From: Macrostomum lignano
Lineage: Eukaryota
Direction: 5' to 3'
Length of the DNA stretch: 64,000 nucleotides
NCBI GenBank assembly: GCA_002269645.1
Contig: NIVC01001141.1
Coordinates: 127,711 to 191,710 of the forward strand
Below the pieces are notes generated by a model. That model saw only the letters and a list, made by a program, of their open reading frames with translations, was not told the origin of the DNA and did not search any database. Made by a program: the position numbers and the translations under genes. Below, piece after piece: positions 5,652-58,085 of the stretch (position 1 is its first letter; every line of letters starts with the position of its first letter).

Positions 5652-8600
5652 CTAGGACTTCTTGAACCGCTTCAACTGGCGATTCGGCTTCAGCTGCGGG
5701 TCGATGACGGGCTTGGCGGGCAGCACGGCCGGGGCGGCGGACGGCACGTCATCGTCTGGGAGGCAGCGAGCTGGGGAGTCCCCAGAAACCCTGACTGCAC
5801 TGCGCCGGGTGGCCGTGAGCATTCGGCGGACCTGCTTGCCGCAGGTCATCTGCCACTCCTGCTCCACCCTGCTCTTGTCCAGGTTGCGGAACATCTTGCG
5901 AATCTCCTGCAGGTTGGCGCCCTCGGAAGGCGGTGGCCCAGCACGAAGATGGTGAGGTTGTTGCGCGGCTCGAAGACGCGGCCGTAGCCGTCCTGCACCG
6001 TGAAGCCGCCATTGTCAAGCGCAAACTTGTCAATGAGGTGCTTAGAGAGGCTGAGGCGCTCCCAGCTGGGGGCATCGTCCCACCTGGGGAAGGTGACGAA
6101 GAACCAGCAGTTCTCATCGCCAGTGTCCAGATAGTCCAAAATCCTTGAGGCCACCCGGTCCATCATGGCCTCGATGAAGGGTGGGTTCACATGCCAGCCG
6201 CCGTGGCACTTGGAGAAGTCCACCTTGAAGAAGCTGCCCATGCTGCCGAACTCCTCGTCAGTGTCGATGAAGAGGCTGCAGAAGCGAGAGTCCGCCTTGT
6301 CGATCATCTTGGAGTTCAGAGGAGACGCGAAGCCCTCGTACCGAACTCCCATGAGGTCATGCAGTGCATTGTGCACCGTGATGGGGTCGCCCCACTGCAG
6401 ACTGCCGGTGCCCAGCGCCTCGTACCTGATCAGCATCCTGGTGGCTGGCAGCAGTCCGAAGTTGCGCACCAGGAACTTCACCCGCCAGCAGTGCTTGGAC
6501 TTGAAGTCGCCCAGTGTCACGTGAGCTGCATCTTCGCTGTCCTCAATCAGCTCTATGCGGAGGTCGCTTGTGTCTTCGTCCCTGCCATCGTCCTTCAGGA
6601 ACTTGCGCAGTCGCTGCTCCAACTGACCAAAGATGGTCCTGGCGTTCTCCCTGTCCGAGCTGAACTTCTTCTCCACGCACTCGTCGATCAGCTTCTGGTT
6701 CACCGAGTCCTCCTCGCTCAGGCTTTGCGGAAACAGCGGGTAGCGCGAGTCCATGCTGCCATCGTAGTCCAGCTGGAAGGACAGCAGCCAGCGGTCCAGC
6801 ATGTTCTGCGCCTCCGAAAGGTTCTTATCCGCTGTGTGGTACATCCTGCCGTCTCCCTTCAGGAAGACGTCCACCAAGGAGCGGGCGAAGCGCCACTGCC
6901 GCAGCTCCGTCAGGTGCTTCTCTGTGGGCTCGGACTCATCAAGCAGTGGGGAATGCCTTCTTTTGAGTCTGTTCCGGAGATCCGCGGTGTTGCCCGTCTC
7001 ATGGCCGTCGGTCTTGGCAGCTCTGTGCCGGCTGGGCTTGAGGATTACACGGAGCTGCTTGCTGCAGGTCATCCGCCACTCCTCCTCCACCATGTGCCGG
7101 TTGAGGTTGCGGAACATCTTGCGAATCTCCTTTAGGTTGGCATCATCGGGCAGGCGGTTCCCCATCACGAAGATGGTGAGGTTGTTGCGGGGCACGAAGA
7201 TGCGGCCGTAGCAGTCCTGCACCGTGAAGCCGCCGTCGTCCAGCTCGATCTGGTCGATGCGGCGCTTGGAATCACTGAGACGCACCCAGCCGGGGGTGTC
7301 ATCCCACCTGGCGGATGTTTAGGCGATGGGAAAAAATACAATTTAGAGGTGTAAGAAAAAAAAGTTTCTGACGTAGATAAGAAATCCCCTTAGTGAGTTA
7401 GAAGCAATCAAATCCGATTTGACCATCGAATTCCTATCTAAATAAAATTCATTCGGCCGCAAGAAGGCTTCGACTTGGAGAAAAACTGAAGCAGACCAGC
7501 ACATTCCTCTACTAAAAGTAGCGAGGATCGGGTATAGACAGAATTTTGGCATGCTTTGAAATCTGCCATGAATGTTAACTAAGCAAAGGTCGCCACCTCA
7601 GAGATTTCTGAGCTAGAAGCGCACTTGCTTAGCTGTACTGTGTGGACAGGTCGCTCAAACTACGAGTACAGGTGTAAAACGAGTAAATTGGTAATTCCTA
7701 GTGCAATGCAGAGACAGCAATTTTTATTCCAGTATCTGAGATACACTGGTAATTTAACTGCATCAGTTTCACAGAGTCACTCCACTTCTAGCTCGTAAAT
7801 ACCCTCAGAATTTGCGCTTAATGTTGTGGAAGGAGAGCTCCCTTCAGGCCAAGAGACATCCCAACAATAGTGTCCCAGTTGTGGCTCTCAAATCCTGGGA
7901 TTATTGGGCGGCAGATCGTCCCGAATTAAGTGCTCAAATCCCAGGAGCAATAGCTGGGAAACGATCCCGAACAGAGTGCTTGAATCCCTGGATCAGTTGC
8001 TGGTGAGGATCCCAAAAAGGCTCAAATACCGGGATCAGTGGCTGGTAAGGATCCCAATTCCAAAATAGGCTTAAATACCGGGATCAGTGGCTGGTAAGGA
8101 TCCCAAATAGGCTTAAATACCAGGATCAGAGGCTGGTAAGGATCCCAAATAGGCTTAAACACCGGGATCAGTGGCTGGTGAGGATCCCAAATAGGCTCAA
8201 ATACCGGGATCAGTGGCTGGTAAAGATCCCAAATAGGCTCAAATACCGGGATCAGTGGCTGGTAAAGATCCCAAATAGGCTCAAATACCGGGATCAGTGG
8301 CTGGTGAGGATCCCAAATAGGCTCAAATACCGGGATCAGTGGCTGGTAAAGATCCCAAATAGGCTCAAATACCGGGATCAGTGGCTGGTAAAGATCCCAA
8401 ATAGGCTCAAATACCGGGATCAGTGGCTGGTAAGGATCCCAAATAGGCTTAAATACCGGGATCAGTGGCTGGTAAGGATCCCAAATAGGCTTAAATACCG
8501 GGATCAGTGGCTGGTAAGGATCCCAAATAGGCTTAAATACCGGGATCAGTGGCTGGTAAAGATCCCAAATAGGCTCAAATACCGGGATCAGTGGCTGGTA

Positions 8601-11600
8601 AGGATCCCAAATAGGCTTAAATACCGGGATCAGTGGCTGGTAAGGATCCCAAATAGGCTCAAATACCGGGATCAGTGGCTGGTGAGGATCCCAAATAGGC
8701 TCCAATACCGGGATCAGTGGCTGGGAGAGGATCCCAAATAGAGTGCTCAAATACCGGGATCAGTGGCTGGTGCGGATCCCAAATAGGCTCAAATACCGGG
8801 ATCGGTGGCTGATGAGGATTCTGAGTTGATCCGGGACTGCTAAGTATGATTAAAAAGGTTGCTGGTGGAACAAAACGCTGAGCGCTCTCAACAGTCGAAC
8901 CTGGGGAAGGTGACGAAGAACCAGCAGTTCTCATCGCCAGTGTCCAGGTAGTTCAGCACCTTGGTGGCCACCCGGTCCATGAGCTCCTCGATGAAGGGCG
9001 GGTTGACCGTCCATCCACCGTGGCACTTGGAGAAGTCCACCTTGAAGAAGCTGCCCATGCTGCCGAACTCCTCGTCAGTGTCGATGAAGAGGCTGCAGAA
9101 GCGAGAGTCCGCCTTGTCGATCATCTTGGAGTTCAGAGGAGACGCGAAGCCCTCGTACCGAACTCCCATGAGGTCATGCAGTGCATTGTGCACCGTGATG
9201 GGGTCGCCCCACTGCAGACTGCCGGTGCCCAGCGCCTCGTACCTGATCAGCATCCTGGTGGCTGGCAGCAGTCCGAAGTTGCGCACCAGGAACTTCACCC
9301 GCCAGCAGTGCTTGGACTTGAAGTCGCCCAGTGTCACGTGAGCTGCATCTTCGCTGTCCTCAATCAGCTCTATGCGGAGGTCGCTTGTGTCTTCGTCCCT
9401 GCCATCGTCCTTCAGGAACTTGCGCAGTCGCTGCTCCAACTGACCAAAGATGGTCCTGGCGTTCTCCCTGTCCGAGCTGAACTTCTTCTCCACGCACTCG
9501 TCGATCAGCTTCTGGTTCACCGAGTCCTCCTCGCTCAGGCTTTGCGGAAACAGCGGGTAGCGCGAGTCCATGCTGCCATCGTAGTCCAGCTGGAAGGACA
9601 GCAGCCAGCGGTCCAGCATGTTCTGCGCCTCCGAAAGGTTCTTATCCGCTGTGTGGTACATCCTGCCGTCTCCCTTCAGGAAGACGTCCACCAAGGAGCG
9701 GGCGAAGCGCCACTGCCGCAGCTCCGTCAGGTGCTTCTCTGTGGGCTCGGACTCATCAAGCAGTGGGGAATGCCTTCTTTTGAGTCTGTTCCGGAGATCC
9801 GCGGTGTTGCCCGTCTCATGGCCGTCGGTCTTGGCAGCTCTGTGCCGGCTGGGCTTGAGGATTACACGGAGCTGCTTGCTGCAGGTCATCCGCCACTCCT
9901 CCTCCACCATGTGCCGGTTGAGGTTGCGGAACATCTTGCGAATCTCCTTTAGGTTGGCATCATCGGGCAGGCGGTTCCCCATCACGAAGATGGTGAGGTT
10001 GTTGCGGGGCACGAAGATGCGGCCGTAGCAGTCCTGCACCGTGAAGCCGCCGTCGTCCAGCTCGATCTGGTCGATGCGGCGCTTGGAATCACTGAGACGC
10101 ACCCAGCCGGGGGTGTCATCCCACCTGGCGGATGTTTAGGCGATGGGAAAAAATACAATTTAGAGGTGTAAGAAAAAAAAGTTTCTGACGTAGATAAGAA
10201 ATCCCCTTAGTGAGTTAGAAGCAATCAAATCCGATTTGATCATCGAATTCCTATCTAAATAAAATTCATTCGGCCGCAAGAAGGCTTCGACTTGGAGAAA
10301 AACTGAAGCAGACCAGCACATTCCTCTACTAAAAGTAGCGAGGATCGGGTATAGACAGAATTTTGGCATGCTTTGAAATCTGCCATGAATGTTAACTAAG
10401 CAAAGGTCGCCACCTCAGAGATTTCTGAGCTAGAAGCGCACTTGCTTAGCTGTACTGTGTGGACAGGTCGCTCAAACTACGAGTACAGGTGTAAAACGAG
10501 TAAATTGGTAATTCCTAGTGCAATGCAGAGACAGCAATTTTTATTCCAGTATCTGAGATACACTGGTAATTTAACTGCATCAGTTTCACAGAGTCACTCC
10601 ACTTCTAGCTCGTAAATACCCTCAGAATTTGCGCTTAATGTTGTGGAAGGAGAGCTCCCTTCAGGCCAAGAGACATCCCAACAATAGTGTCCCAGTTGTG
10701 GCTCTCAAATCCTGGGATTATTGGGCGGCAGATCGTCCCGAATTAAGTGCTCAAATCCCAGGAGCAATAGCTGGGAAACGATCCCGAACAGAGTGCTTGA
10801 ATCCCTGGATCAGTTGCTGGTGAGGATCCCAAAAAGGCTCAAATACCGGGATCAGTGGCTGGTAAGGATCCCAATTCCAAAATAGGCTTAAATACCGGGA
10901 TCAGTGGCTGGTAAGGATCCCAAATAGGCTTAAATACCAGGATCAGAGGCTGGTAAGGATCCCAAACATACATGCGCAACAGTCGGCCGAGTCGGCCGAT
11001 CCGGCCGACTGATTTGGCAGCCAACCAAGGAAGTCGCAAAAAATGCCCACCCAAAAAATACCCACGCAGTAGTACTAAGTAGCTGACGAGGCATTTTTGC
11101 CTGATAAGACAGTCATAGTTACTCCCGCCGTTTACCCAAAGTTGCGTTAATTTTGCTTTAGGGTTTTTTTACATGTAAGTCGCATTTTTGGCCAAAAACT
11201 ACGTCGCATTTTTGTTAAAACTAAGTCGCACGGCCGACCGAATTTTGGACGTTGCGCATGTATGATCCCAAATAGGCTTAAACACCGGGATCAGTGGCTG
11301 GTGAGGATCCCAAATAGGCTCAAATACCGGGATCAGTGGCTGGTGAGGATCCCAAATAGGCTCAAATACCGGGATCAGTGGCTGGTAAAGATCCCAAATA
11401 GGCTCAAATACCGGGATCAGTGGCTGGTGAGGATCCCAAATAGGCTCAAATACCGGGATCAGTGGCTGGTAAGGATCCCAAATAGGCTCAAATACCGGGA
11501 TCAGTGGCTGGTAAAGATCCCAAATAGGCTCAAATACCGGGATCAGTGGCTGGTAAGGATCCCAAATAGGCTTAAATACCGGGATCAGTGGCTGGTAAGG

Positions 11601-12994
11601 ATCCCAAATAGGCTTAAATACCGGGATCAGTGGCTGGTAAAGATCCCAAATAGGCTCAAATACCGGGATCAGTGGCTGGTAAGGATCCCAAATAGGCTTA
11701 AATACCGGGATCAGTGGCTGGTGAGGATCCCAAATAGGCTCAAATACCGGGATCAGTGGCTGGTGAGGATCCCAAATAGGCTCAAATACCGGGATCAGTG
11801 GCTGGTAAGGATCCCAAATAGGCTCAAATACCGGGATCAGTGGCTGGTGAGGATCCCAAATAGGCTCCAATACCGGGATCAGTGGCTGGGAGAGGATCCC
11901 AAATAGAGTGCTCAAATACCGGGATCAGTGGCTGGTGCGGATCCCAAATAGGCTCAAATACCGGGATCGGTGGCTGATGAGGATTCTGAGTTGATCCGGG
12001 ACTGCTAAGTATGATTAAAAAGGTTGCTGGTGGAACAAAACGCTGAGCGCTCTCAACAGTCGAACCTGGGGAAGGTGACGAAGAACCAGCAGTTCTCATC
12101 GCCAGTGTCCAGGTAGTTCAGCACCTTGGTGGCCACCCGGTCCATGAGCTCCTCGATGAAGGGCGGGTTGACCGTCCATCCACCGTGGCACTTGGAGAAG
12201 TCCACCTTGAAGAAGCTGCCCATGCTGCCGAACTCCTCGTCAGTGTCGATGAAGAGGCTGCAGAAGCGAGAGTCCGCCTTGTCGATCATCTTGGAGTTCA
12301 GAGGAGACGCGAAGCCCTCGTACCGAACTCCCATGAGGTCATGCAGTGCATTGTGCACCGTGATGGGGTCGCCCCACTGCAGACTGCCGGTGCCCAGCGC
12401 CTCGTACCTGATCAGCATCCTGGTGGCTGGCAGCAGTCCGAAGTTGCGCACCAGGAACTTCACCCGCCAGCAGTGCTTGGACTTGAAGTCGCCCAGTGTC
12501 ACGTGAGCTGCATCTTCGCTGTCCTCAATCAGCTCTATGCGGAGGTCGCTTGTGTCTTCGTCCCTGCCATCGTCCTTCAGGAACTTGCGCAGTCGCTGCT
12601 CCAACTGACCAAAGATGGTCCTGGCGTTCTCCCTGTCCGAGCTGAACTTCTTCTCCACGCACTCGTCGATCAGCTTCTGGTTCACCGAGTCCTCCTCGCT
12701 CAGGCTTTGCGGAAACAGCGGGTAGCGCGAGTCCATGCTGCCATCGTAGTCCAGCTGGAAGGACAGCAGCCAGCGGTCCAGCATGTTCTGCGCCTCCGAA
12801 AGGTTCTTATCCGCTGTGTGGTACATCCTGCCGTCTCCCTTCAGGAAGACGTCCACCAAGGAGCGGGCGAAGCGCCACTGCCGCAGCTCCGTCAGGTGCT
12901 TCTCTGTGGGCTCGGCTGACTTGACGCTGGGCTCGGACTCATCAAGCAGTGGCTGGCGCTTTAGTTTGAGTTTGTCTCTGAGATCGGTGGCCAT
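5652..12994 (-). CDS. PCIF1/CAPAM-like N6-adenosine methyltransferase with three tandem catalytic units, about 1,269 aa; exons 12994-12066, 10124-8901, 7307-5652
   Basis: Each unit has the PCIF1-family motifs RYE..LQ, EGFASPLN, FCSLF.DTD..FGS.GSF and NPPF. Both introns are phase-2 GT-AG and join in frame (FPR^WDD). One apparent 1-nt deletion near 5927. No WW domain seen. Confidence 0.85.
8005..8830. repeat. Intronic minisatellite, 42-bp unit (GGATCCCAAATAGGCTCAAATACCGGGATCAGTGGCTGGTAA), intron 2 of the PCIF1-like gene
   Basis: Direct periodicity; the same unit recurs in intron 1. Confidence 0.95.
10822..11985. repeat. Intronic 42-bp minisatellite, intron 1 of the PCIF1-like gene, interrupted by a MITE
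   Basis: Same unit and flanks as 8005-8830, but with a different copy number. Confidence 0.95.
10967..11264. mobile_element. hAT-type MITE, 298 bp
   Basis: 14-bp TIRs CATACATGCGCAAC/GTTGCGCATGTATG and 8-bp TSD ATCCCAAA. A second copy lies at 24182-24480. Confidence 0.9.
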
Positions 12995-13617
12995 TTGCTT
13001 GAGACGATGATGTCAGAGTTTTATTCAGCTTTCTGACTCGCTTTTTAATTTAAAACGTAAAACAGAAAACAAATTATCTGCTAAATCCGGAAGCCTCAGT
13101 TTTCATTTTTCGTTTTCATTCTTGTCGTTGCTTGCCTTCTTCCTTTAATAGGTTCAATGTACAAGCCAGGCCCTACCCTCAGCCCTGTCAGCCTCTCACT
13201 GCTGGCCCGCGGGGAGAGAAATGAAGCCCAATGCCTCGACTCTTTTTAGAAACCCCCTTGCCCGTGCACAAATGTACACTCTGCCCTGCGTCAATGTACA
13301 TTATTTTCCCTGTCCCCCGCCTTCCCAGCGCTAAATGACTGTACACACAGAAAGAACGCCTCTCTCCACAGCCTGACTCGCTAGACAAAGCCTTAGAAGT
13401 AAAGCCAACTAACCTTACATTCAGCAGGGGCCTGTCTTCTGCTCAAGAACTACTAATACTGAATACTCGTATATACAAATACAAGCTATAGTAGGGCTCC
13501 AACCAACTAAAGAGAAGTTTCTATCTATCGAGTTAAAGCAAAATATAAATATTTAAAATCTAAAGCAAAATCAAATAATAAATATTTCACTTTGCGGCTT
13601 CTAATCCAACCAAAAGT

Positions 13618-15221: not shown

Positions 15222-16811
15222 TCAGTTGCCATGCTGGGCGAAGAACTCCCTGGCCGCGGCGCACCTGGGATTTGTGCACAGCGGGCAGCGCAGCTGGAAC
15301 TGCGAGCTGACGGTGCAGCCCTCGGCCAGGTGCTGCAGCACCAGGTCGGCCAGCGCAGACACGAAGGTCGGACTGTCGTTGAGAGCCTCGGAGCGGAGGA
15401 CGCGGGCGCCGAGGTCGCCGGCCAGTTTGCCTGCGTATTCGACGTCCAGCTCGTACAGCGTCTCGATGTGGTCGCTGGTGAAGGCGATGGGCACCAGAAC
15501 CAGCTGGTCGCGGCCGCGCTTCACCAGGCCGCGGATGGCCTCCTCCGTGCTGGGGCCCAGCCAGGGCAGCGGACCCACCTTGGACTGCCAGACCAGCCGG
15601 TACGGCACGCTGCCGGGGCCCAGCGCCTGCGCCACCATATGGGCGGTGACGGCCACCTCAGCCGGGTACGGGTCGCCCCGGTTCACCACCGACATGGGCA
15701 GCGAGTGGGCGGAGATCAGCAGCGCGCAGCGGGCCCGTTCCTCCGGCCCCAGCCTATCCAGCTCTGGCCGAACCCGCTCGGCCACGGCGGCCACGAAGCC
15801 AGCGTGCGCCGGCCAGCGGTCGATGAGCGACCAGCGCTGAATGCTGCTGGCCCCGCTGCGCTTGCGGTAGTACGCGGCCAGCGCGTTGAAGGAGCTGCCG
15901 CTGGTGCTGCAGGAGTACTGCGGGTACTGTGAGAAGGCGATCGCGTGCTGCACGCCGTCCCGCTCCATCGCCTCCACGGCGTCCTCCAGCAGCGGCCGGG
16001 CGTAGCGGAAGCCAACGTAGTGGCGATGCGGCGCCGATCCCGGGCTCAGCCGGTCCAGCTGAGCCGTCATGGCGCGGCCCTGCGGGTTTGGGGATAATTC
16101 TCCCATGGTCAGCTTTCATGGCTGGTCAGCTCCTACGAAGTCTGACATGCTGGAAAGTTATTTACGATACATATCGGCACCCGAACAGTGATATATAAGA
16201 GAGATCGCTTACTGAAGAGAAGCAAGGAAACAATTTGAAGCGAATCTCTTATAGGGTGTGCAAAAGGTTGCGCACTGATGGATAAACAGAAATTTGACGC
16301 GTGTGTCTTTGAGCTGGCAAAGAGAACTCAGACACTGGTCCTGGCCAATCGTGAGTCCGAGTCTCGCACTTGGACACATGCAGAAGCTCATATGTGGAAT
16401 GCCAAGCCAGTATCGCTAGAAAATTTGCATCCACTCACCGAATACTAAGATTGAAGCTAAACAAAAGCTAAAACTGTCCCCTGAGCGGGGACTCACCTGA
16501 GCCTCAGTCCACTTGAGGATTGGGCTGCCGCCGCCAATGCGGTAGTACTGCTCCCTGATGGCCGGGGTGCGCCTCCTGGCGATGTACTTAGACAGCCGAG
16601 ACTGTGCGGGCAGCGGGATCAAGTCCCCGTCACTGAACAGGCGGTGCAGAAAGTCGCCAACATCGTCCAGTGTCTCCGGCCCGCCCATGTTCAGCATGAG
16701 GATGCCGGTCTTGGGAGGCTGCGCGCCGCCGCTGGTGGAGCTGAGAAGACGGCGGCCAGAGGCGGTCAGACGGGCCAGCCGCCCAGAGGACAGCAGCGGC
16801 AGCAGCGGCAT
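15222..16811 (-). CDS. FECH: Ferrochelatase, mitochondrial, about 390 aa; exons 16811-16497 and 16079-15222
   Basis: Motifs [60 protein letters not shown] and [13 protein letters not shown]. Phase-0 GT-AG intron; Arg/Ser-rich transit-like N-terminus. Confidence 0.97.
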
Positions 16812-17077
16812 AGGAAGAGGCTGCGGAGCGATCGAACAGACTACTGCTAGTAGGGAGTAAAAGTTATTGAAGTTAAATTCTAAGAACAAAAAGCAGAAAA
16901 TTAACAAGAACAAAAAATAAAAAGCGAAACAACAGAAAATTGTTCTAGCAGCAAAGGTCTGCACGCAGAAAATGCAGTGTAGGGTGCATTTTATTGGTAG
17001 AACAAGCTAGCAATCAATGATAACACATTAGGCTGCAAAGTAACTGGGCTGTTGCCAGTGAAGCTACAAATTAAAAG

Positions 17078-18546
17078 TCAAAACTCGGCAGCCAGCAGCC
17101 GCAGCTTCTTCAGCAGCCGCCTGTCCGGGACGCGGCCGGGCAGCGAGTCCGCGTCCACCCACTTCCAGCTGCCCGAGGCCTCTGCGCTGCGCCAGTCGGC
17201 ACCGGTGAAGATGGCCCGGTGCAGGAACAGGGAAACTGGGGATTTCTTGTACTTGTACGTGTGCAGGCCGACTGGCGCGTTGCCTAGCAACCGGCAGCTG
17301 GCGGTCAGCCCCATCAGCTCCAGTAGGCGGTCGCAGGCGGCTCGAAGGCTGGCGTCGCCGTCAACAACTGGGCAGCAGGGGAGGCAGAGGTCAGCATCCG
17401 TGCTGAGCAGCACGGCTGGCCGCTTCAGGCTGGGGTCGGCGGCCTCCCTGTGGTGGAGAGAATGCGGAGTAGCTACTGTGAGTAGTGAGAGCGGACTGCA
17501 GCTGACCTAGCTGTGCAAACAGCTACTGTGAGTAGTGAGAGCGGACTGCAGCTGACCTAGCTGTGCAAACAGCTACTGTGAGTAGTGAGAGCGGACTGCA
17601 GCTGACCTAGCTGTGCAAACAGCTACTGTGAGTAGTGAGAGCGGACTGCAGCTGACCTAGCTGTGCAAACAGCTACTGTGAGTAGTGAGAGCGGACTGCA
17701 GCTGACCTAGCTGTGCAAACAGCTACTGTGAGTAGTGAGAGCGGACTGCAGCTGACCTAGCTGTGCAAACAGCTACTGTGAGTAGTGAGAGCGGACTGCA
17801 GCTGACCTAGCTGTGCAAACAGCTACTGTGAGTAGTGAGAGCGGACTGCAGCTGACCTAGCTGTGCAAACAGCTACTGTGAGTAGTGAGAGCGGACTGCA
17901 GCTGACCTAGCTGTGCAAACAGCTACTGTGAGTAGTGAGAGCGGACTGCAGCTGACCTAGCTGTGCAAACAGCTACTGTGAGTAGTGAGAGCGGACTGCA
18001 GCTGACCTAGCTGTGCAAACAGCTACTGTGAGTAGTGAGAGCGGACTGCAGCTGACCTAGCTGTGCAAACAGCTACTGTGAGTAGTGAGAGCGGACTGCA
18101 ACTGACCTAGCTGTGCAAACAGCTACTGTGAGTAGCGAGAGTGGCTATGCAATACAATTAAAGCATTAAGTGAAACCGACAGCACACCTGGAGGCCAGAG
18201 TGACTGCCTGTTGCTCAGCAGCCCACCGCTGCATCAGGTCCTTGGCGGTAATTACGGCGCCGTCCCTGGCCACCTGGACTTTGCCCTCCGCGGCTGCGCT
18301 GAGGCTCCGCTTGGCTGCCTCCGACTCGGCGCGGTCGCGCAGCTCAAAGTCGGACAGGCGGCTGCGCTCAAAGTCCAGCCGGGTGAAGAGGTCCGAGGCT
18401 CGAGTCTCCAGTTCAGTGAGGTCAGGCGTGAGCACAGCTTTGCGCTGGATGAGCAGGCCAACGCTGAGCAGCCGGCCAGACCGGGTGAGGCCCGGAGTGG
18501 CGGCTGAGCCCGATCGCCACAGGGCAGCCACAGCGGCTGATGTAGC
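17078..18546 (-). CDS. MRPL46: Mitochondrial ribosomal protein L46 (mL46); exons 18546-18188 and 17447-17078; no genomic ATG found
   Basis: GLLIQRKAVLTPDLTELE, FERSRLSDFELR, AKDLMQRW and LLGNAPVGLHTYKY match the mL46 pattern as I recall it. The phase-2 intron joins in frame. Confidence 0.85.
17471..18135. repeat. 50-bp minisatellite, 13 near-identical copies, filling the MRPL46 intron
   Basis: Exact 50-bp period. Confidence 0.95.
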
Positions 18547-18581
18547 CTGCGGATGGCGGGGGACTGGGATGCAGATCCTGG

Positions 18582-18790
18582 GTGCTGATCCCACTATAGG
18601 GTGCTGATCCCACTATGGGATGCTGATCCCACTATGAGGTGCTGATCCCACTATGAGGTGCTGATCCCACTATGAGGTGCTGATCCCACTATGAGGTGCT
18701 GATCCCACTATGGGATGCTGATCCCACTATGAGGTGCTGATCCCACTATGGGGTGCTGATCCCACTATGGGGTGCTGATCCCACTATGGG
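18582..18790. repeat. 19-bp minisatellite (GGTGCTGATCCCACTATGA) upstream of the MRPL46 acceptor
   Basis: Direct periodicity. Confidence 0.9.
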
Positions 18791-19503
18791 TTGTTGCTCG
18801 CACAGAAGTGCCAGATCCTACTTAGACTGCACAGTCAATGGATAACGCGGTGCCCAAGGTTTTATACCAAAACAGAAGTAACTCAGAGCTGAGGAAGCAA
18901 GCTGAACCCGAGCTAAAAACCACCTGCCGCACCAAAATGATTTACAAGGCAGCGGCAAAAAACAGCCCAGTGAGTTTCGAATCGCGAGGAAAAATAACAA
19001 GACAGCGATCGGACAGTTTATTTGATTAGATTGAGTACAGATAGCAGTGCCAGTTGCAGCAGTCGGACCGCAAAGTCAACCAGCCTCAACACAGAAGTCC
19101 CAATAGGTCCCAGCACAGCGTGCAATTGTCAATGCAGTGCGAGCCCGCTGCATCAGTGGGCGCGCTGGGCAACAACTGCAGCACAGGGCTGCGCAGGGCA
19201 CAAGCAAAGGTCCGCGGGACTCGCTTGAGAAAAATTGTCACAATTAGAAAGAGAAAAACGGCTGCTTCAAACAAATAATGAATCAGAATTAGATCGGACA
19301 ATAAAGCTGCTCAATAAGTGCGGGCTCATTGATTCTAGTGAAACTTGCTAAACACTAACAGTCAAAGCTTGCATATCTAATCTGAAATAGTTAAGTACTT
19401 AGCATGCAGCGCAGAGTAGCAAGGTACCTATTAGACAAATTTCTGCTTCAATAAAAAGTTCCAGAGTTTGCAGACGAGACTCCAGATGAGCTGCGCCGGT
19501 GCC

Positions 19504-22500
19504 TCACACAGCACCCTCAGCCTTGCCCTGGTGCAGGCTCACGTAGTAGTCGTGAAAGTACATGATGATGGCGAGAGGCTGTCCGATGATGAGGCTGAGC
19601 CACACCGCCATGTTGCCGAGCTGACCGCCTCGGAGAACCCGACTGACGAACATGGCGAACGGAACCTGCGGGTGGGGAGTGACCTGCTCAGCTGCCCATC
19701 TGCAGGAGTGACCTGCTCAGCTGCCCATCTGCAGGAGTGACCTGCTCAGCTGCCCATCTGCAGGAGTGACCAGCAGTGGGATCGGTGGGACTAGTACACT
19801 GGGACCAGCACACTGGGATCAGAACTGAGATCAGTAGGACCAGCACACTGGGACCAGCACACTGGGACCAGCACACTGGGACCAGCACACTGGGACCAGC
19901 ACACTGGGACCAGCACACTGGGACCAGCACACTGGGACCAGCACACTGGGACCAGCACACTGGGACCAGCACACTGGGACCAGCACACTGGGACCAGCAC
20001 ACTGGGACCAGCACACTGGGACCAGCACACTGGGACCAGCACACTGGGACCAGCACACTTGGACCAATACAGGGATCAGTGGGACTTGTACACTGGGACC
20101 AGCAGTGGGATCGGTGGGACTAGTACACTGGGACCAGCACAGGAATCAGTGAGACTAGTACACTGGGACCAGCGGTGGGATCGGTGGGACCAGCACATTG
20201 GGACCAGCACAGGGATCAGCCCTGTCCCGCGCACCTGCATAATCATGGCCAGGAAAGCCCAGAGCCGGAACATGCGCAGCGGCACGGATACCAGCAGCTC
20301 GTGGAAGAAGGCGGACACGGCGAAGACCACAACAGAGGCCAGCAGCTTGTTGAAGCCCCAGCGGTGGATCAGCGGAGTGAAGATGTGCCGCTTGGCAAAG
20401 CGGTGAACGGGCACATTCCAGAGCGTCCAGAACTCGGTGACGCTCTCGCTGTTCCACCAGTCCTTGTAGAAGTTGCGGTCGCCAAACAGCGTCAGCTCCC
20501 CGGCCACGTTCAGCGCGGAGTGGAAGAACACGTAGAAGAAGATCAGCCAGATGAGGTGGTTGGGGATGGCCAGCTTCAGCAGCCGCTCCAGCACCACCGG
20601 CCATTCCGAGGCCTGCAGCGGCTTCACGGAGTTGTTCAGGATCGGAATGATCCACTGCTGCGTCAGGCCCGCCATCACCTGCGGATGCGAGGCGTAGCTG
20701 GCCTGCTGACACTGCGTGACTGGCATCTGATCTGACTGCATAGCTGTGCCTGACTCATCTGATCTGACTGCATAGCTGTGCCTGACTCATCTGATCTGAC
20801 ACTGCATAGCTGTGCCTGACTCATCTGATCTGACTGCATAGCTGTGCCTGACTCATCTGATCTGACTGCATAGCTGTGCCTGACTCATCTGATCTGACAC
20901 TGCATAGCTGTGCCTGACTCATCTGATCTGACACTGCATAGCTGTGCCTGATTCATCTGATCTGACACTGCATAGCTGTGCCTGACTCATCTGATCTGAC
21001 ACTGCATAGCTGTGCCTGACTCATCTGATCTGACACTGCATAGCTGTGCCTGACTCATCTGATCTGACACTGCATAGCTGTGCCTGACTCATCTGATTTA
21101 ATCTGACACTACGAAAGCGACTGCACAATTGTGCCTGACTTGACTGACACTGAGTGACACCGACTCATTTGATCTGACATTGCGCGACTGAGTGACTTAT
21201 GTGGTCTGACACTGCATTGCTGACACCTGCTGCCCGGCTTACCTGCGGCAGGAACACGAGTTCCAGACATCGCTTGACCAAGAATCGCTTCCGAATTCGC
21301 ATCAGCCTGGGAAAGTTGAGCTCATAGCAGAGAGTCGGCGTCATCATGAAGTAGTACAGGTTGCCCAGAGTCAGGTTCTCCGGGTAGCACAGCAGGGAGG
21401 ACCGGCTGGAGGACCCCCTGGCCAGCCGCAGCCGCTCGCTGCCGCCGTCCCCGTCGGCCCCAGCCTCCGTGAGCACGGAGGCGATGCTCTTGTTCCGCTT
21501 GAGCTCTGAGCGCTTGTTGAGCTGCAGTTGGCGCTCCAGACGGCACCAGGAGTTCATGTCCCGGTAGGACCACAGCTTCAGGAACACGATGGAGTAAATG
21601 CCCAGGGTTGGCGCGCTGAAGACTGCAAAGAGGGAGGCGAACACGTCTATGACCCCCAGAGCACAGGGCAGGTCTAATACCCCCAGAGCACAAGGCAGGT
21701 CTAATACCCCCAGAGCACAGGGCAGGTCTAATACCCCCAGAGCACAAGGCAGGTCTAATACCCCCAGAGCACAAGGCAGGTCTAATACCCCCAGAGCACA
21801 AAGCAGGTCTAATACCCCCAGAGCACAAGGCAGGTCTAATACCCCCAGAGCACAAGGCAGGTCTAATACCCCCAAAGCACAAGGCAGGTCTAATACCCCC
21901 AGAGCACAAGGCAGGTCTAATACCCCCAGAGCACAAGGCAGGTCTAATACCCCCAGAGCACAAGGCAGGTCTAATACCCCCAGAGCACAAGGCAGGTCTA
22001 ATACCCCCAGAGCACAAGGCAGGTCTAATACCCCCACAGCACAAGGCAGGTCTAATACCCCCAGAGCACAAGGCAGGTCTAATACCCCCAAAGCACAAGG
22101 CAGGTCTAATACCCCCAGAGCACAAGGCAGGTCTAATACCCCCAGAGCACAAGGCAGGTCTAATACCCCCAAAGCACAAGGCAGGTCTAATACCCCCAGA
22201 GCACAAGGCAGGTCTAATACCCCCAGAGCACAAGGCAGGTCTAATACCCCCAGAGCACAAGGCAGTCTAATACCCCCAGAGCACAAGGCAGGTCTAATAC
22301 CCCCAGAGCACAAGGCAGGTCTAAGACCCCACTGCACAAGGCAGATCTAATACCCCAGATCTCAAGGCAGGACTAATACCCCCACAGCACAAGGCAGGTC
22401 TAAGACCCCACTGCACAAGGCAGGTCTAATACCCCAGATCTCAAGGCAGGACTAATACCCCCACAGCACAAGGCAAGTCTAATACCCCACTGCACAGGGC

Positions 22501-23915
22501 AGGTCTAATACCCCCACAGCACAAGGCAAGTCTAATACCCACAGCACAGGGCAGGTCTATAGCCCCCAGACAGCCGCAGCTCACATGGATTCGGGTGGTC
22601 TCTCAGAATGAGGTAGGACGGCACGAGGAGCAGGGCGGCCAGATTGCCCACCTGCAGACAGGAGAGGGCGGGCGACACCAGCCGGAAATTCTCCGCCAGC
22701 AGCTCGAGGCCGAAGGCGATGAAGATGAAGATGTTGCACATGAGCAGCAGGCAGATGCACGGCCACTGGCCAGGCGAGGACAGGAAGATCTCGATGGGCC
22801 TGACCGGGTCCACCAGGATGCCGTACTTGATTATGTTTTCCAGCGCCACCCGGAAGTTCGACACCACCAGCAGGATGAGGCCCAGGTTCAGCAGGCCGCG
22901 GAAGTTGTTGAAGCCGCTCGAAGAGGAGAACGGGCTGTCAACCAGGCTGTGCAACCTGCGAATGTATGGGGAAAATGCAGAGCATATATCCAATCTGAGC
23001 TATTCTATATCCAATCTGACCTATTCTATATCCAATCTGACCTATTCTATATCCAATCTGACCTATTCTATATCCAATCTGACCGATTCTACATCCAATC
23101 TGACCTATTCTATATCCAATCTGACCGATTCTATATCCAATCTGACCTATTCTATATCCAATCTGACCGATTCTACATCCAATCTGACCTATTCTATATC
23201 CAATCTGACCTATTCTATATCCAATCTGACCTATTCTATATCCAATCTGACCTATTCTATATCCAATCTGACCGATTCTACATCCAATCTGACCTATTCT
23301 ATATCCAATCTGACCTATTCTATATCTAATCTGACCTATTCTATATCCAATCTGACCGATTCTATATCCAATCTGACCTATTCTATATCCAATCTGACCT
23401 ATTCTATATCCAATCTGACCTATTCTATATCCAATCTGACCGATTCTACATCCAATCTGACCTATTCTATATCCAATCTGACCGATTCTATATCCAATCT
23501 GACCTATTCTATATCCAATCTGACCGATTCTATATCCAATCTGACCTATTCTATATCCAATCTGACCGATTTTACATCCAATCTGACCTATTCTATATCC
23601 AATCTGACCTATTCTATATCCAATCTGACCGATTCTACATCCAATCTGATCCATTATGTTTCAATAGACCGAGATAGGTTATATTTATCCCAAATATAAA
23701 TCTGGATGCACCACTCACGGCTTATCGGGCGCCATCTCCTTGATTGCCCGCTCCAGAGTCTCCATGTCCTCCAGGCGGTTCAGGCTGCTGCTGCGCGGCA
23801 GGCGCCGCTTCGACTCGGAGGTCGCCACCGTGGCGCCTTGGTCAGCAAGCGCGGAATCATCTTTGGCGCCACCCTTGGCGCCAATGCCAGCTGATCGCCT
23901 GCGAGCCTCGGACAT
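19504..23915 (-). CDS. DGAT1: Diacylglycerol O-acyltransferase 1 (MBOAT), about 517 aa; exons 23915-23719, 22955-22585, 21622-21243, 20678-20235, 19665-19504
   Basis: Motifs DSPFSSSSGFNNFRG, FLKLWSYRD, PTLCYELNFPR, AIPNHLIWL, FGDRNFYKDWWN, SAFFHE and IIGQP. Exon lengths sum to 1,554 nt with consistent phases. Confidence 0.96.
19678..20215. repeat. DGAT1 intron 4: short 29-bp array plus 14-bp array (GGGACCAGCACACT)
   Basis: Direct periodicity. Confidence 0.9.
20725..21110. repeat. DGAT1 intron 3: 32/34-bp minisatellite
   Basis: Direct periodicity (CTGATCTGAC[AC]TGCATAGCTGTGCCTGACTCAT). Confidence 0.92.
21653..22560. repeat. DGAT1 intron 2: 27-bp minisatellite (CCCCCAGAGCACAAGGCAGGTCTAATA)
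   Basis: Direct periodicity. Confidence 0.95.
22985..23650. repeat. DGAT1 intron 1: 21-bp minisatellite (ATATCCAATCTGACCTATTCT)
   Basis: Direct periodicity. Confidence 0.95.
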
Positions 23916-27669: not shown

Positions 27670-28399
27670 GCGTATGCGCCCCAAATGTACTCTAGCTTAG
27701 AACACCAACAGCCGTTCACTCGCACCTCCTCCAGATAGTTGGACATTGAGAATGGGTTTGTGTAACTTAATGTGCAGAGCTTCAAGAATGTTAAGTTTAT
27801 GCTCATTTTTGCTGTTGTCTATGACCTTGAAATGAGAGGTTATGTCTGGCTCATCACAACAACCATGGCATTGCAGCAAATGTTCCTGAATCGGAGAGTT
27901 TCGTTGTCTATGTTCCTTGGCTCTCGTGAGTAGGTGTCGCTTGGTTTTACCAATGTAGGTAATGCTCTGGTCAACAGAGCAACGAAAACGATAGATGACA
28001 CCTGCCTTGAGAGCACATGGAACACGAGACTTTAAACTGCCAACGAATTGACTGACTTTATGAGTACGGAACACTACATGAATCTTAGTCTTAAAGAATT
28101 TTTGGCAAGTTTTGCGAATTTGCCTCTTAAACACAATCGAAGAGTTGCCCAAAAACGGAAGAGTCAAGATTGGTTCTCCTGGTTCTCTATCTGGCCGTTT
28201 AGGTTTAAGCTTTTTTTCAATTTTTTCATCTAAGAAATTACCAATAACCTTCATGATGTAGTTAATAGGGTATCCATTGGCAGTGAGAATATTGATAATG
28301 TATTAATATATATCAATATTCTCACTGCAGTACATCTCGTAATAACATCTCATAAAAACAGCATGCAGTACATCTCGAAAACACATGGTGGTTTTCGAC

Positions 28400-34904: not shown

Positions 34905-35450
34905 TTTTCAATTGGAGTACATCAATTGTGGCCCTTATAATTCAATTCTTACAGCAAGTCAATTAGAGTAAAAAGTTATGACATAATCAATTTCTCAGTC
35001 AGCCAGTATCAGTTTCAATTCAAGTTAGCAATATTGGTTACGCAATTTAAATCAAGTCGTGTGTGCATTTCTTCGGCACTGTTTTCTACTTGTTGTGATG
35101 CAATCTTTATCAGAATTGAAATTCAGTCAGTCAGGTTTTTTTCTAGCATTCTTACAATGCATTTCAAGTCGAAAATTTTGCTTGACCTTTGCAAAAAAGC
35201 ATGTTTTTCGAATATTTAATCCCTTTAATATATAGCAATTTCTTAGCCAAGATGCATGTACCGTCCCAGGAAAATTTCTGATCGAATGGTGCAAGTTTGA
35301 AGAAAATCGGTTGAGCCAATTTTTCTGAAATCTATCGCATACCCACAGACAACTCATTTTTAGTATATAGGATATTGTTGCAAGTAGGTCCGGAACAATC
35401 ACTTAACTAAGTTGCTGCTATTTTTGCGAGTAACATTCACCCGAGTTTCC

Positions 35451-49622: not shown

Positions 49623-50861
49623 AAAGGGGCGCCAAATCAGTGGGCAGTAAAGTTTTGAGAGCCTATGTAGAACAATACATAACCCTTAAATTGCATCCGA
49701 TGAGCTTATATGACGTAAAAATTCGCCTCCGAAGAGCTTTCATTTGAAAGTTATGTCTTCCTTTCGCATACTAGCTGCATGGTGTCAAGAAATTCTGGCC
49801 TTAGTATAGGCCATAGTGCTCAATGTTGACGCACTCTTAGGACCACTCAGAATACTCGTATTTTACTATAAGATGCAATAATAGTCGAAGTCGAAGACGA
49901 TAGTTAATAGACAACGATTTTATGTTATATTTGCAGATATTTTCTGAACTTCTGAACTAAATTCAAACAAAACGCAGCCAAACTTTATGGATTCAAAAGT
50001 TTAAGAGTTTGTAACGGAATTTTCACTTTGGGGCTTTTCATACGAGCGTATTACCAATTCCAGAATCAGAATCGGTTCGGATCTTCCAAGAAAAACAGCA
50101 GTATAACTATTTAATTCTGTTGAATGTTTGACTGCCTTAACAACCTCACTTTGCACAATTTTTCACTTTCTTCTTGGCGATTGTCATTCAATAATAAAAA
50201 CTTTATAGCACATATCTCCCTCTAGTTATGGAGACAAAAAGTTATACTTCACAAATTGGTTCTGGTTCTGGAACCAGAACAAGCAATATGAAAAGGCCCT
50301 AGGTACGGTCTAACGCGGCGCGGCAGCTCAGCTCGCCGTGCTCCCGTCTAAACGCCATAATTTTAGTTGCTGTATTACCGACTAGACGGTCGTCAATAGG
50401 CTGAGCTAGGGCCTGCGCAAGTAGAAGAATTGGAAACTATGTTTCTTGGAAAATTTTGAATTTAGGAGGCCAGGTTTTTTTCAAAAAAATACATTACAGA
50501 AACAGGTTTTCATTTTTATAGGGCCTAGCTCTATTGATATTTTCTATACTATGCCTAAAAAAATAAAATGCATGGCATAGCTTTACTCATCATTTTTATA
50601 AATCTATTTATCTTTTCTATCTGTTATATAATATTGTTATAGTCAACTAGAGCCTCAGGCTAAGAATTATAAAATTGATTCATGAGATGAAACCAATGAG
50701 CCAAGCTTTTTTATTTTTTTGGTTTCAAGGCTATCAAGACTATAATACTATAGGCCTATAAATTATAAGTGCAATATATATTTAATAAAAAATAATTTTT
50801 TAAACAAAAAGCTTTTTAGAAAGTAATAGAACTAGAACTATAAAAAGGCAAATTATCTCAA

Positions 50862-57234: not shown

Positions 57235-58085
57235 TTACTTGTCAAAGTCAGAGCCCTCGTCACGCAGCTTTTGCTGCACAGCCCGGAAGAACTGCTCTCC
57301 GTCGCGCTCGGCAAACTTAAGCATGTCCTGCTGCGCCGCCTTGGCGAAGGCCGGATCCAGCTCCTTAAGCTCGCGGCCCGTCTGCATGGCCAGCAGCTGG
57401 TACATGGCGCAGCGCTCCAAGTAGTAGGAGTAGTGGAAGGCCATGGCCGCGGTTCCCGCTAGTACCAGGTAGCCGTGGTTGGCCATCATCAGGCAGGTCT
57501 TGTCAGGTGCCAGGCAGGAAGCCAGCCGAGCGCCCTCTGAGTCCTGGACGGAGACGCCGCTGTAGTCCAGATCGTAGGCGATGCTGCTGAGAAAGTACAG
57601 GCAGTTCTGGTGCACCATGCGCAGTCGGGAGTCCTGTAGGCAGCTGAGGGCGGTGGCGTACGGACTGTGCAGGTGGAAGACCGCCTTGGCCTCGGGCCGG
57701 GCCTCGTGCAGCGGTCGGTGGATTGTGGCCGCGGACGTCTCGGCGCGACCGTTGCCCTCCACTACCCGACCTGCAGCGTCGAGGCCGACCAGGTCGGAGG
57801 CGCGCACGCGGGACCAGTGCAGGCCGTAGGGCACCAGCAGCATCAGCTCGGCTCCGGAGCCGTCAGCCGATGGCGTCATCAGGCTGAGATGGTTGCAGAT
57901 GCCCTCGTTGTAGCCCAGCTGGTCCAGGGCCCTGTAGGCTGCCGCCAGGTCCACCCTGGCTTGCCAGTTCTGCTGAGCCGCTGTTGTGGCGCACCGTTCT
58001 CGCTGAGCTGGCGGATGCCGGTGGCCACCGGCTGCAACAGCAGGCGGCACCGCGTCCAGCCGTTGCGTACTGCTGCAGTCAACAT
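57235..58085 (-). CDS. Class II aldolase/adducin-head family protein, intronless, with a probable transit peptide
   Basis: RVDLAAAYR, EGICNHLS, IHRPLH, VFHLHSPYATALS and MANHG (metal-binding His retained). The N-terminus MLTAAVRNGWTRCRLLLQPVATGIRQLS joins via an apparent 1-nt deletion near 57989. Confidence 0.88.

What the first reader, a model, noticed from the sequence alone, without database searches (positions are those of the whole stretch)
18520..19000. MRPL46 lacks a genomic start codon; the spliced leader may donate its AUG
Seen: the MRPL46 frame opens immediately after CCATCCGCAG with GCT ACA TCA GCC (ATSAAVAALWRSGSAATPGLTRSGR, transit-peptide-like). I find no sense-strand ATG exon between it and the DGAT1 polyA signal. 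Known: flatworm SL sequences end in AUG, which has been shown to serve as an initiator in schistosomes. Inference: SL-AUG joined in phase 0 yields M-ATSAAVAALWRS..., making translation strictly dependent on trans-splicing.
Basis: partly seen in the sequence, partly recalled or inferred. Interest (0 to 1): 0.75.

Follow-up and report, generated by a model that had tools for sequence, protein, structure and literature searches.

The report
ATG-less mitoribosomal gene needing spliced leader
A flatworm gene for mitochondrial ribosomal protein mL46 has no start codon of its own and most likely borrows the AUG at the end of the trans-spliced leader RNA, a trick already documented in flatworms, so this is a tidy new example and not a new mechanism.

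Summary
On the minus strand an intact two-exon mL46 (MRPL46) reading frame begins at 18546, directly after ccgccatccgCAG. The minus strand has no ATG in any frame from 19152 to 18235. This stretch covers the whole spacer back to the DGAT1 AATAAA (19022-19017). The only in-frame genomic ATG is codon 105, inside the conserved domain.

The window comes from a Macrostomum-like flatworm. Its PCIF1-like gene hits M. lignano best, it shares a non-coding repeat with an M. lignano scaffold, and its mL46 hits trematodes and a cestode best. Three Macrostomum species share one spliced leader (SL) ending ...TTGCATG.

The acceptor 9-mer CATCCGCAG|G also sits at an inferred intron acceptor in DGAT1. It is in phase 0, so SL-AUG joined to GCU gives MATSAAV..., a typical mitochondrial presequence in Kozak context GCAUGG. 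DGAT1, MRPL46 and FECH lie on one strand with short spacers, like an operon.

I had no transcript data, so trans-splicing at this site is inferred, not shown. A weak rival mini-exon lies in the DGAT1 3'UTR (ATG 19374, donor GTTAGT).

SL-AUG initiation is established in Schistosoma (Cheng 2006). This is therefore a new member of a known kind, of moderate to low interest.

The parts
19504..19665 (-). Last coding exon of the upstream DGAT1 gene (acceptor cacccgCAG|G, stop TGA 19506-19504)
   Evidence: Translation VPFAMFVSRV...KAEGAV*. Exons 4 and 5 match human DGAT1 at 5.7e-76. Pfam MBOAT.
19017..19022 (-). AATAAA, the only minus-strand poly(A) signal between the DGAT1 stop and MRPL46
   Evidence: Regex scan for AATAAA/ATTAAA.
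18791..19016 (-). Unique DGAT1-MRPL46 spacer with no minus-strand ATG
18580..18790 (-). 19-bp x 11.1 minisatellite in the spacer (presumed outron). It has no minus-strand ATG, and each unit carries TAG and a weak gggatcAG
   Evidence: TRF. AG and phase table.
18613..18615 (-). Nearest in-frame stop (TAG) upstream of the mL46 frame
18547..18579 (-). Pyrimidine-rich tract plus 3' splice acceptor cccagtcccccgccatccgCAG (AG = 18548-18547). This is the proposed SL trans-splice site, in phase 0
   Evidence: Best pyrimidine tract (0.72) of all AGs after the last in-frame stop. The same 9-mer CATCCGCAG|G sits at the inferred acceptor of DGAT1 exon 4, and CACCCGCAG|G at that of the last DGAT1 exon. Both exon boundaries are inferred from the reading frame.
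18188..18546 (-). MRPL46 (mL46) exon 1. It starts GCT ACA TCA (A-T-S), encodes the presequence plus the MRP-L46 N-domain, and ends at donor CAG|GTGTGC
18232..18234 (-). First in-frame genomic ATG (codon 105), downstream of the Pfam MRP-L46 match (residues 27-104)
17448..18187 (-). MRPL46 intron containing a 50-bp x 13.4 minisatellite
17078..17447 (-). MRPL46 exon 2 (acceptor ccaccacAG, stop TGA 17080-17078)
   Evidence: Alignment to mL46 orthologs across the full length.
16990..16995 (-). AATAAA poly(A) signal of MRPL46
16809..16822 (-). Ferrochelatase 5' end. The acceptor-like gctccgCAG ends at 16821, 9 nt upstream of the genomic ATG 16811 and in phase 0 with it. It lies about 170 nt from the MRPL46 poly(A) signal
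   Evidence: Ferrochelatase identity.
19354..19374 (-). Rival cis mini-exon candidate ATGCAAGCTTTGACT|GTTAGT inside the DGAT1 3'UTR (phase 0, non-consensus donor)
   Evidence: Enumeration of ATG...phase-0 GT combinations.

Best explanation
MRPL46 is the middle gene of a same-strand DGAT1 -> MRPL46 -> FECH cluster in a Macrostomum-like flatworm. Its pre-mRNA is either a read-through polycistron or a transcript that starts in the spacer. That pre-mRNA carries an unpaired 3' splice site at 18548-18547.

The spliceosome joins the genus-wide spliced leader (...CAAUUUAUUGCAUG) to base 18546. The last three SL bases then become the initiator codon. The mRNA reads ...UUGC AUG|GCU ACA UCA, and the protein starts M-ATSAAVAALWRSGSAATPGLTRSGRLL. 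This is a cleavable mitochondrial presequence that leads into the conserved mL46 core.

Shown here: the ATG-less intact gene, the in-phase acceptor, the flatworm origin of the window, and the operon-like layout.

Taken from the literature: the SL sequence and the precedent for SL-AUG initiation.

Inferred: that this acceptor is actually trans-spliced, and that the SL-AUG is the codon used.
For: 1. Intact, conserved gene. It has 242 codons in two exons and passes the Pfam MRP-L46 cutoff. Full-length alignments to mL46 orthologs show 26 residues before the conserved core, against 0-60 in orthologs, so no further N-terminal coding sequence is needed.

2. No minus-strand ATG from 19152 to 18235. 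The first in-frame ATG is codon 105, after the N-domain.

3. The frame opens exactly at a CAG with the best pyrimidine tract in the region. The identical 9-mer CATCCGCAG|G sits at an inferred cis acceptor in the neighbouring DGAT1.

4. Phase 0 gives an in-frame AUG-GCU in the context GCAUGG (-3 purine, +4 G; read directly from the SL and the exon sequence).

5. M+ATSAAV...QRK has 5 Arg/Lys and no Asp/Glu in the first 42 residues. It has an R-x-L|S motif just before the core, as a mitochondrial presequence would (read directly).

6. Organism. The PCIF1-like gene hits M. lignano best (49% identity, E 5e-83). A 135-nt non-coding repeat is 81% identical to M. lignano scaffold NIVC01000281.1. Named mL46 top hits are Dicrocoelium, Paragonimus, Trichobilharzia and Hymenolepis. 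Tandem repeats make up 24.6% of the window, compared with 15% simple and tandem repeats in M. lignano (PMC5730564).

7. M. lignano, M. cliftonense and M. hystrix share an SL ending TTGCATG. An environmental SL RNA gene reads ...TTGCATG|GTAAG.

8. Operon-like spacing. From the DGAT1 AATAAA to the acceptor is about 470 nt, or about 260 nt without the minisatellite. From the MRPL46 AATAAA to the FECH acceptor-like site is about 170 nt. Both are below the 1-kb repeat-adjusted operon threshold used for M. lignano, where 30% of genes are trans-spliced.

9. Precedent. More than 40 S. mansoni cDNAs need the SL-AUG (PMC9851317, citing Cheng 2006).
Against: - There is no transcript evidence. The organism's own proteins and transcripts are absent from the searched collections.
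- No SL RNA gene lies in the window.
- The acceptor CCGCAG does not match the most enriched M. lignano trans-acceptor motif [T/C]TNCAG. That motif is present at only 44% of sites.
- In five Macrostomum-type SL-capped mRNAs the SL-AUG opens only 2-41-codon ORFs, and the main ORF uses its own ATG. The base rate of SL-AUG use is therefore low.
- Cestode-type mL46 orthologs have genomic ATGs, so the ATG-less state is not ancestral to flatworm mL46.
- Species identity is not pinned down. The best M. lignano match is only 49%, and no M. lignano FECH or mL46 appeared among the hits.
Confidence: 0.7

Rival explanations
1. A cis-spliced upstream exon supplies the ATG. The only candidates downstream of the DGAT1 stop lie inside the DGAT1 3'UTR. 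The best is ATGCAAGCTTTGACT|GTTAGT (19374-19354), which would give MQALT-ATSAAV...
For: Five ATG...phase-0 GT combinations exist between 19503 and 18547. The one at 19374/19359 has a GTNAGT-type donor.
Against: - None of the five has the GT[A/G]AG donor that dominates in M. lignano. The two donors I checked in this window are GTG-type: GTGTGC and GTGCGC.
- All five lie upstream of the DGAT1 poly(A) signal. The exon would therefore sit inside another gene's 3'UTR, and its ATG would be an internal ORF of a read-through transcript.
- With 118 such combinations in 5.4 kb, they are what chance delivers.
Confidence: 0.1
2. The mRNA is not trans-spliced, or is cis-spliced from a non-coding 5' exon. 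Translation then starts at a near-cognate codon in the open frame upstream of 18546, for example GTG 18594 in the context ataGTGg.
For: The frame is open from 18612. In-frame ATA, GTG, AGG and ATC codons are present, and the GTG has A at -3 and G at +4.
Against: - These codons lie in or next to the last unit of a minisatellite, and the encoded WDQHPIVGSAPRICIPVPRHPQ is repeat-derived, not presequence-like.
- Non-AUG initiation is rare and inefficient (general knowledge).
- A consensus acceptor sits exactly at the start of the presequence-like sequence.
Confidence: 0.05
3. This copy is not the functional gene. It could be a start-less duplicate in a polyploid or duplicated macrostomid genome, or the true first exon was displaced or lost by minisatellite expansion or misassembly.
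For: M. lignano assemblies are highly duplicated (PMC5730564; PMC8629364). The spacer holds a minisatellite. A second gene in the window, the class II aldolase, also has its ATG out of frame with its conserved domain. That could point to indel errors.
Against: - The 242-codon frame is intact across two exons with correct splice sites, and conserved residues align over the full length.
- No indel can create the problem, because there is no ATG in any frame for 600 nt upstream.
- An N-terminus of normal length is already present.
Confidence: 0.08
4. The SL is added at another in-phase AG (18604 gggatcAG| or 18613 catAG|). This would give a 19-22-residue longer N-terminus, still started by the SL-AUG.
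For: Both AGs lie after the last in-frame stop and are in phase 0.
Against: Their upstream tracts are purine-rich (pyrimidine fraction 0.50, against 0.72 at 18547) and they are repeat-derived.
Confidence: 0.05

Closest known systems
Schistosoma mansoni mRNAs that use the SL 3'-terminal AUG as initiator methionine (Cheng, Cohen, Ndegwa & Davis 2006, J Biol Chem 281:733; cited in PMC9851317, PMC12582326, PMC5832876)
   Same: Flatworm. The SL ends in AUG. The recipient exon begins in phase 0 at the trans-splice acceptor with no genomic AUG before the conserved protein, so the SL supplies the start codon.
   Different: A different order (Macrostomorpha, free-living) and a different SL sequence. 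Here nothing is shown experimentally. In Schistosoma, use of the SL-AUG as initiator is reported as established.
Macrostomum SL trans-splicing and operons (Wudarski 2017 PMC5730564; Ustyantsev & Berezikov 2021 PMC8629364; Wiberg 2023 PMC10468722)
   Same: Same-strand genes separated by short, repeat-containing spacers. The downstream gene starts at a CAG acceptor. The SL ends in ATG, which Wiberg et al. flag as a 'translation start codon'.
   Different: None of the three papers, where I searched or read them, reports a survey of genes that depend on the SL-AUG. The acceptor here (CCGCAG) is not the top motif [T/C]TNCAG. The species is not confirmed to be one of the three published ones.
slORFs: ORFs created by SL addition (slORFfinder, PMC9851317)
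   Same: An ORF exists only after the SL is joined to the recipient mRNA.
   Different: slORFs in nematodes, trypanosomes and Oikopleura mostly use near-cognate NUG codons and are often new or alternative ORFs. Here the canonical, conserved protein itself would be the slORF.
mL46 (MRPL46) of mammalian and other mitoribosomes (PDB 4v1a_j, 3j7y_e)
   Same: MRP-L46 N-domain plus a NUDIX-like C-domain, with an N-terminal cleavable presequence.
   Different: About 30% identity. It is shorter (243 aa against 279). The linker after the N-domain is shortened. The conserved Trp at the core start is replaced (GRLLSVGLLIQRK).

Membership tests
Flatworm genes initiated by the SL 3'-terminal AUG | The organism has an SL RNA whose exon ends in AUG | tested here: inconclusive
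   No SL gene lies in the window. The window is Macrostomum-like. All three sequenced Macrostomum species share an SL ending TTGCATG. An environmental SL RNA gene confirms ...TTGCATG|GTAAG. The species itself is not identified.
Flatworm genes initiated by the SL 3'-terminal AUG | [quoted passage not shown] | tested here: met
   cccccgccatccgCAG|GCT has a pyrimidine fraction of 0.72. The identical 9-mer sits at an inferred cis acceptor in DGAT1.
Flatworm genes initiated by the SL 3'-terminal AUG | The SL-AUG is in frame with the conserved ORF, with no intervening stop | tested here: met
   Phase 0. AUG|GCU ACA... reads straight into mL46.
Flatworm genes initiated by the SL 3'-terminal AUG | No genomic in-frame AUG can give the full-length protein | tested here: met
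   No minus-strand ATG from 19152 to 18235. The first in-frame ATG is codon 105, after the N-domain.
Flatworm genes initiated by the SL 3'-terminal AUG | Transcripts carry the SL at this junction and ribosomes initiate on the SL-AUG | not testable with these tools
   No transcripts of this organism are in any searchable collection.
SL-resolved operon (polycistron) as defined for M. lignano | Adjacent same-strand genes with a repeat-adjusted intergenic distance below 1 kb | tested here: met
   DGAT1 AATAAA to acceptor is about 470 nt, or about 260 nt without the minisatellite. MRPL46 AATAAA to the FECH acceptor-like site is about 170 nt. The criterion comes from PMC8629364.
SL-resolved operon (polycistron) as defined for M. 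lignano | The downstream gene is SL trans-spliced | not testable with these tools
   This needs SL-read mapping.
mL46 / MRPL46 | MRP-L46 N-terminal domain (PF11788) above the gathering score | tested here: met
   24.2 bits against a cutoff of 21.9, residues 27-104.
mL46 / MRPL46 | Full-length homology to mitoribosomal mL46, including the C-terminal NUDIX-like part | tested here: met
   54 HMMER hits, and those looked up by name are mL46. The alignment covers residues 27-243. The family profile hits PDB mL46 chains at 1.8e-78.

The most novel reading that the evidence does not exclude
Obligate SL-AUG genes may be a recurrent and largely unannotated class in macrostomid flatworms. In this class, trans-splicing would be a mandatory switch for translating housekeeping mitochondrial proteins.

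Three observations hint at this. A second gene in the same 64 kb, the class II aldolase at 58104-57238, also lacks an in-frame ATG before its domain and has an in-phase CAG. FECH has an in-phase acceptor 9 nt before its ATG. No M. lignano mL46 turned up in either protein search, although other M. lignano proteins are in the collection.
Probability: 0.3. Interest if true: 0.5.

Novelty: new member of a known kind. Interest (0 to 1): 0.33.

Why it matters
If confirmed, an essential mitoribosomal protein in a regeneration model genus could be made only from trans-spliced mRNA.

- This would give a clean natural reporter for SL-AUG initiation outside parasitic flatworms.
- It is a practical warning for genome annotation. 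Pipelines that trim the SL together with its ATG, or that demand a genomic ATG, will truncate or drop such genes. Wiberg et al. deliberately left the ATG untrimmed to avoid annotation problems.
- It matters for transgene design in Macrostomum, where artificial ATGs are currently added.

It does not change what is known about the mechanism.

Tried and rejected
- Word-indexed homolog search with mL46 found nothing. The full HMMER search was needed.
- Rfam scan of the window gave 0 hits.
- Search for the M. lignano SL allowing 3 mismatches gave 0 hits.
- A regex for ATG|GTRWG followed by an Sm-like site gave one unconvincing AT-rich hit at 53216. blastn of an environmental SL RNA gene against the window gave nothing. 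There is no SL gene in the window.
- The ferrochelatase search identified only 'metazoan' (59-61% to cnidarians, molluscs and others).
- Synteny attempt: the M. lignano scaffold carrying the PCIF1-like homolog has no FECH, MRPL46 or DGAT1 within 10 kb. No orthologous 5' end could be compared.
- An exact 32-mer of exon 1 in JGI metagenomes gave 0 hits.
- Supplements of the M. lignano papers contain no MRPL46, FECH or DGAT1 entries. No paper mentions Macrostomum together with MRPL46.
- Cheng 2006 is not held, so it is cited second-hand.
- Downstream Met105 as the start was rejected, because it removes the presequence and the whole Pfam N-domain.
- ATG depletion of the spacer as a signal in itself was rejected. 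About 2% of comparable windows are ATG-free.
- A DGAT1-mL46 in-frame fusion through the donor-like TAC|GTGAGC (19542) was considered. It is judged a coincidence of phase.
Full report
**What is in the sequence**

The feature lies on the minus strand. Reading the reverse complement...cccagtcccccgccatccgCAG ends at 18547. The next base, 18546, opens GCT ACA TCA GCC..., which translates to ATSAAVAALWRSGSAATPGLTRSGRLLSVGLLIQRK....

With donor CAG|GTGTGC at 18187 and acceptor ccaccacAG|G at 17448, two exons (18546-18188 and 17447-17078) give an uninterrupted 242-codon frame ending in TGA.

Identity as mL46 was checked three ways.
- Pfam places residues 27-104 in MRP-L46 (PF11788), at 24.2 bits against a gathering score of 21.9.
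- An exhaustive HMMER search of 1.84 billion representatives finds 54 relatives, and those I looked up by name are mL46.
- A profile of the aligned family hits mammalian mitoribosomal mL46 chains at 1.8e-78.

The upstream same-strand gene is DGAT1 (5.7e-76 to human DGAT1; MBOAT). Its stop is at 19506-19504. Its only AATAAA is at 19022-19017. The downstream same-strand gene is ferrochelatase.

**The missing start codon**

The minus strand has no ATG in any frame between 19153 and 18234.
- The nearest in-frame upstream stop is TAG 18615-18613.
- The only in-frame genomic ATG is codon 105. It lies beyond the Pfam N-domain, so it cannot yield a functional, imported protein.
- In the multiple alignment the window protein has 26 residues ahead of the conserved core. 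Orthologs have 0 to about 60. Nothing more is needed upstream except a Met.

How unusual is the ATG-free run?
- A Markov model expects 5.5 ATG in the 357 non-repeat bases 18796-19152, with P(0)=0.004.
- Empirically, 2.3% of repeat-free 357-nt minus-strand windows in this window are also ATG-free.
- The depletion is uncommon, not extraordinary. Its placement in front of a conserved gene is the point.

**Which organism**

- The ferrochelatase search only says 'metazoan'.
- The mL46 search is more telling. The best hit is the trematode Dicrocoelium (E 6e-19). Paragonimus, Trichobilharzia and the cestode Hymenolepis are also among the top named hits.
- The PCIF1-like gene, present in three tandem copies at 5.8-13 kb, hits Macrostomum lignano best (BOX15_Mlig021227g1, 49% identity, E 5e-83). 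The next hit of a different origin is at 39%.
- The M. lignano scaffold that carries that gene shares a 73%-identical exon with the window. It also shares a 135-nt non-coding repeat at 81% identity.
- A quarter of the window is minisatellite. Every DGAT1 intron, the MRPL46 intron and the DGAT1-MRPL46 spacer carry one. In M. lignano, simple and tandem repeats make up 15% of the genome and inflate operon spacers.

I conclude that the window comes from a macrostomid flatworm. It does not match the annotated M. lignano proteins exactly. The species remains open.

**The spliced leader**

- M. lignano uses a single 35-nt SL, CGGTCTCTTACTGCGAAGACTCAATTTATTGCATG (PMC8629364).
[quoted passage not shown] The authors mark that ATG as a translation start codon. 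[quoted passage not shown]
- PMC12582326 and PMC9851317 say the same. They cite Cheng et al. [quoted passage not shown]
- A scan of JGI metagenomes with the SL 29-mer returned an SL RNA gene reading ...TTGCATG|GTAAGACACC (L006). It also returned five SL-capped mRNAs.
- The window itself holds no SL gene.

**Does the locus fit trans-splicing with AUG donation?**

- The acceptor is credible. Among all AGs after the last in-frame stop it has the best pyrimidine tract (0.72).
- The very same 9-mer CATCCGCAG|G sits at the acceptor of DGAT1 exon 4, and CACCCGCAG|G at that of the last DGAT1 exon. These DGAT1 boundaries are inferred from the reading frame and the match to human DGAT1, not from transcripts.
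- The acceptor is in phase 0. SL plus exon reads ...UUGC AUG GCU ACA, with purine at -3 and G at +4.
- The resulting MATSAAVAALWRSGSAATPGLTRSGRLLSVGLLIQRK has five basic and no acidic residues in 42 positions. It has an R-x-L|S motif at the core boundary, so it looks like a mitochondrial presequence.
- The layout is operon-like. DGAT1 AATAAA to acceptor is about 470 nt, or about 260 nt without the 19-bp x 11 minisatellite. MRPL46 AATAAA (16995-16990) to an acceptor-like gctccgCAG in front of FECH is about 170 nt. That FECH site is also in phase 0 with the FECH ATG nine bases later.
- From the numbers in PMC8629364, roughly 45% of human-conserved M. lignano genes are trans-spliced. This is my arithmetic. 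The prior is therefore already high before the missing ATG is considered.
- No transcript that starts anywhere in 19152-18547 contains an AUG before codon 105, whether or not it is cis-spliced. Only three routes to full-length protein remain: the SL-AUG, an exon upstream of 19152, or non-AUG initiation.

**Rivals**

- Cis exon. Downstream of the DGAT1 stop there are five ATG...phase-0 GT combinations, all inside the DGAT1 3'UTR. The best is ATGCAAGCTTTGACT|GTTAGT (19374-19354). None has the GT[A/G]AG donor typical of M. lignano. The window donors I checked are GTG-type. There are 118 such combinations in 5.4 kb, so chance explains them.
- Near-cognate initiation. In-frame near-cognate codons exist, for example GTG 18594. 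They sit in repeat-derived sequence.
- Dead copy or misassembly. This cannot be excluded in a duplicated genome. However, the frame is intact, and no indel could restore an ATG that is absent in all frames.
- Other in-phase AGs. Those at 18604 and 18613 are weaker variants of the same mechanism.

**Cautions**

- In all five retrievable Macrostomum-type SL-mRNAs, the SL-AUG opens only a 2-41-codon ORF. The main ORF starts at its own ATG 15-105 nt downstream.
- Two cestode-type mL46 loci have genomic ATGs.
- SL-AUG dependence is thus an exception, and here it is lineage-specific.

**Comparison and verdict**

The closest known case is the Schistosoma class described by Cheng et al. 2006. The features I could test here are met: an acceptor at the ORF start, phase 0, and no usable genomic AUG. 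Two features were not shown. The SL of this species is inferred from its congeners. The SL junction on transcripts could not be tested.

I put the SL-AUG explanation at about 0.7. It is a new member of a known kind. The papers I read do not survey SL-AUG-dependent genes in Macrostomum, and such genes are an annotation blind spot. The mechanism itself is textbook for flatworms. Interest is about 0.33.

Noticed in passing
window 57238-58104 (-), upstream to 58090: In the class II aldolase/adducin-head gene, the conserved frame has no ATG before codon 75, which lies inside the domain. PDB homology begins at about codon 38-50. An in-phase acceptor-like ccgccagctcAG|CGA at about 58010 would give SL-AUG plus RERCATTAAQQNWQARVDL. 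An ATG at 58084 sits in another frame and encodes a presequence-like MLTAAVRNGWTRCRLLLQPVATGIRQLSE. This is either a second SL-AUG candidate or a 1-nt frameshift or assembly indel.
   Followed up: partly
window 16809-16822 (-): Ferrochelatase has an acceptor-like gctccgCAG 9 nt upstream of its genomic ATG and in phase 0 with it. If trans-spliced there, the SL-AUG would add M-P-L-P in frame.
   Followed up: partly
window 5849-13012 (-): A PCIF1_WW-domain gene is present in three tandem copies. Only the upstream copy (12056-13012) has the MATDLRD start. In the other two the equivalent codon is not ATG, and the open frame runs on from the preceding copy's last exon. These could be fused or start-less duplicates.
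   Followed up: partly
window 17471-18141, 18580-18790, 19676-20219, 20724-21097, 21645-22570, 22985-23649: Every DGAT1 intron, the MRPL46 intron and the DGAT1-MRPL46 spacer contain a 14-50-bp minisatellite of 93-100% unit identity. Tandem repeats make up 24.6% of the window.
   Followed up: partly
window 19542 (-): There is a donor-like TAC|GTGAGC inside the last DGAT1 coding exon. It is in DGAT1's frame and in phase 0 with the MRPL46 acceptor, so an in-frame DGAT1-mL46 fusion is theoretically possible.
   Followed up: no
window 27700-28302 (-) and 50844-51919 (+): Open frames carry GIY-YIG endonuclease domains and lie in AT-rich stretches. I read them as possible Penelope-like retroelement fragments. 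Only the GIY-YIG match was tested, and the 51104-51919 match is below Pfam's gathering score.
   Followed up: no
L002-L005, L007 (JGI Ga0316592) and L006 (Ga0302322_100095745, ~620-730): Environmental contigs carry the exact Macrostomum SL. Five are SL-capped mRNAs whose main ORFs start at their own ATG 15-105 nt downstream of the SL. In these the SL-AUG opens ORFs of only 2-41 codons. The sixth contig has the SL followed by a GTAAG donor and a U-rich, Sm-like stretch, as in an SL RNA gene.
   Followed up: partly
L008 820 and L009 3001: Two cestode-type mL46 orthologs (one from Hymenolepis weldensis, one from a Logan contig) start with a genomic ATG directly in front of the conserved WKIF core. 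They have essentially no presequence.
   Followed up: partly
window 35238-35368 vs L001 10758-10888: A 135-nt non-coding element is 81% identical between the window and an M. lignano scaffold. It is probably a shared short interspersed repeat.
   Followed up: partly
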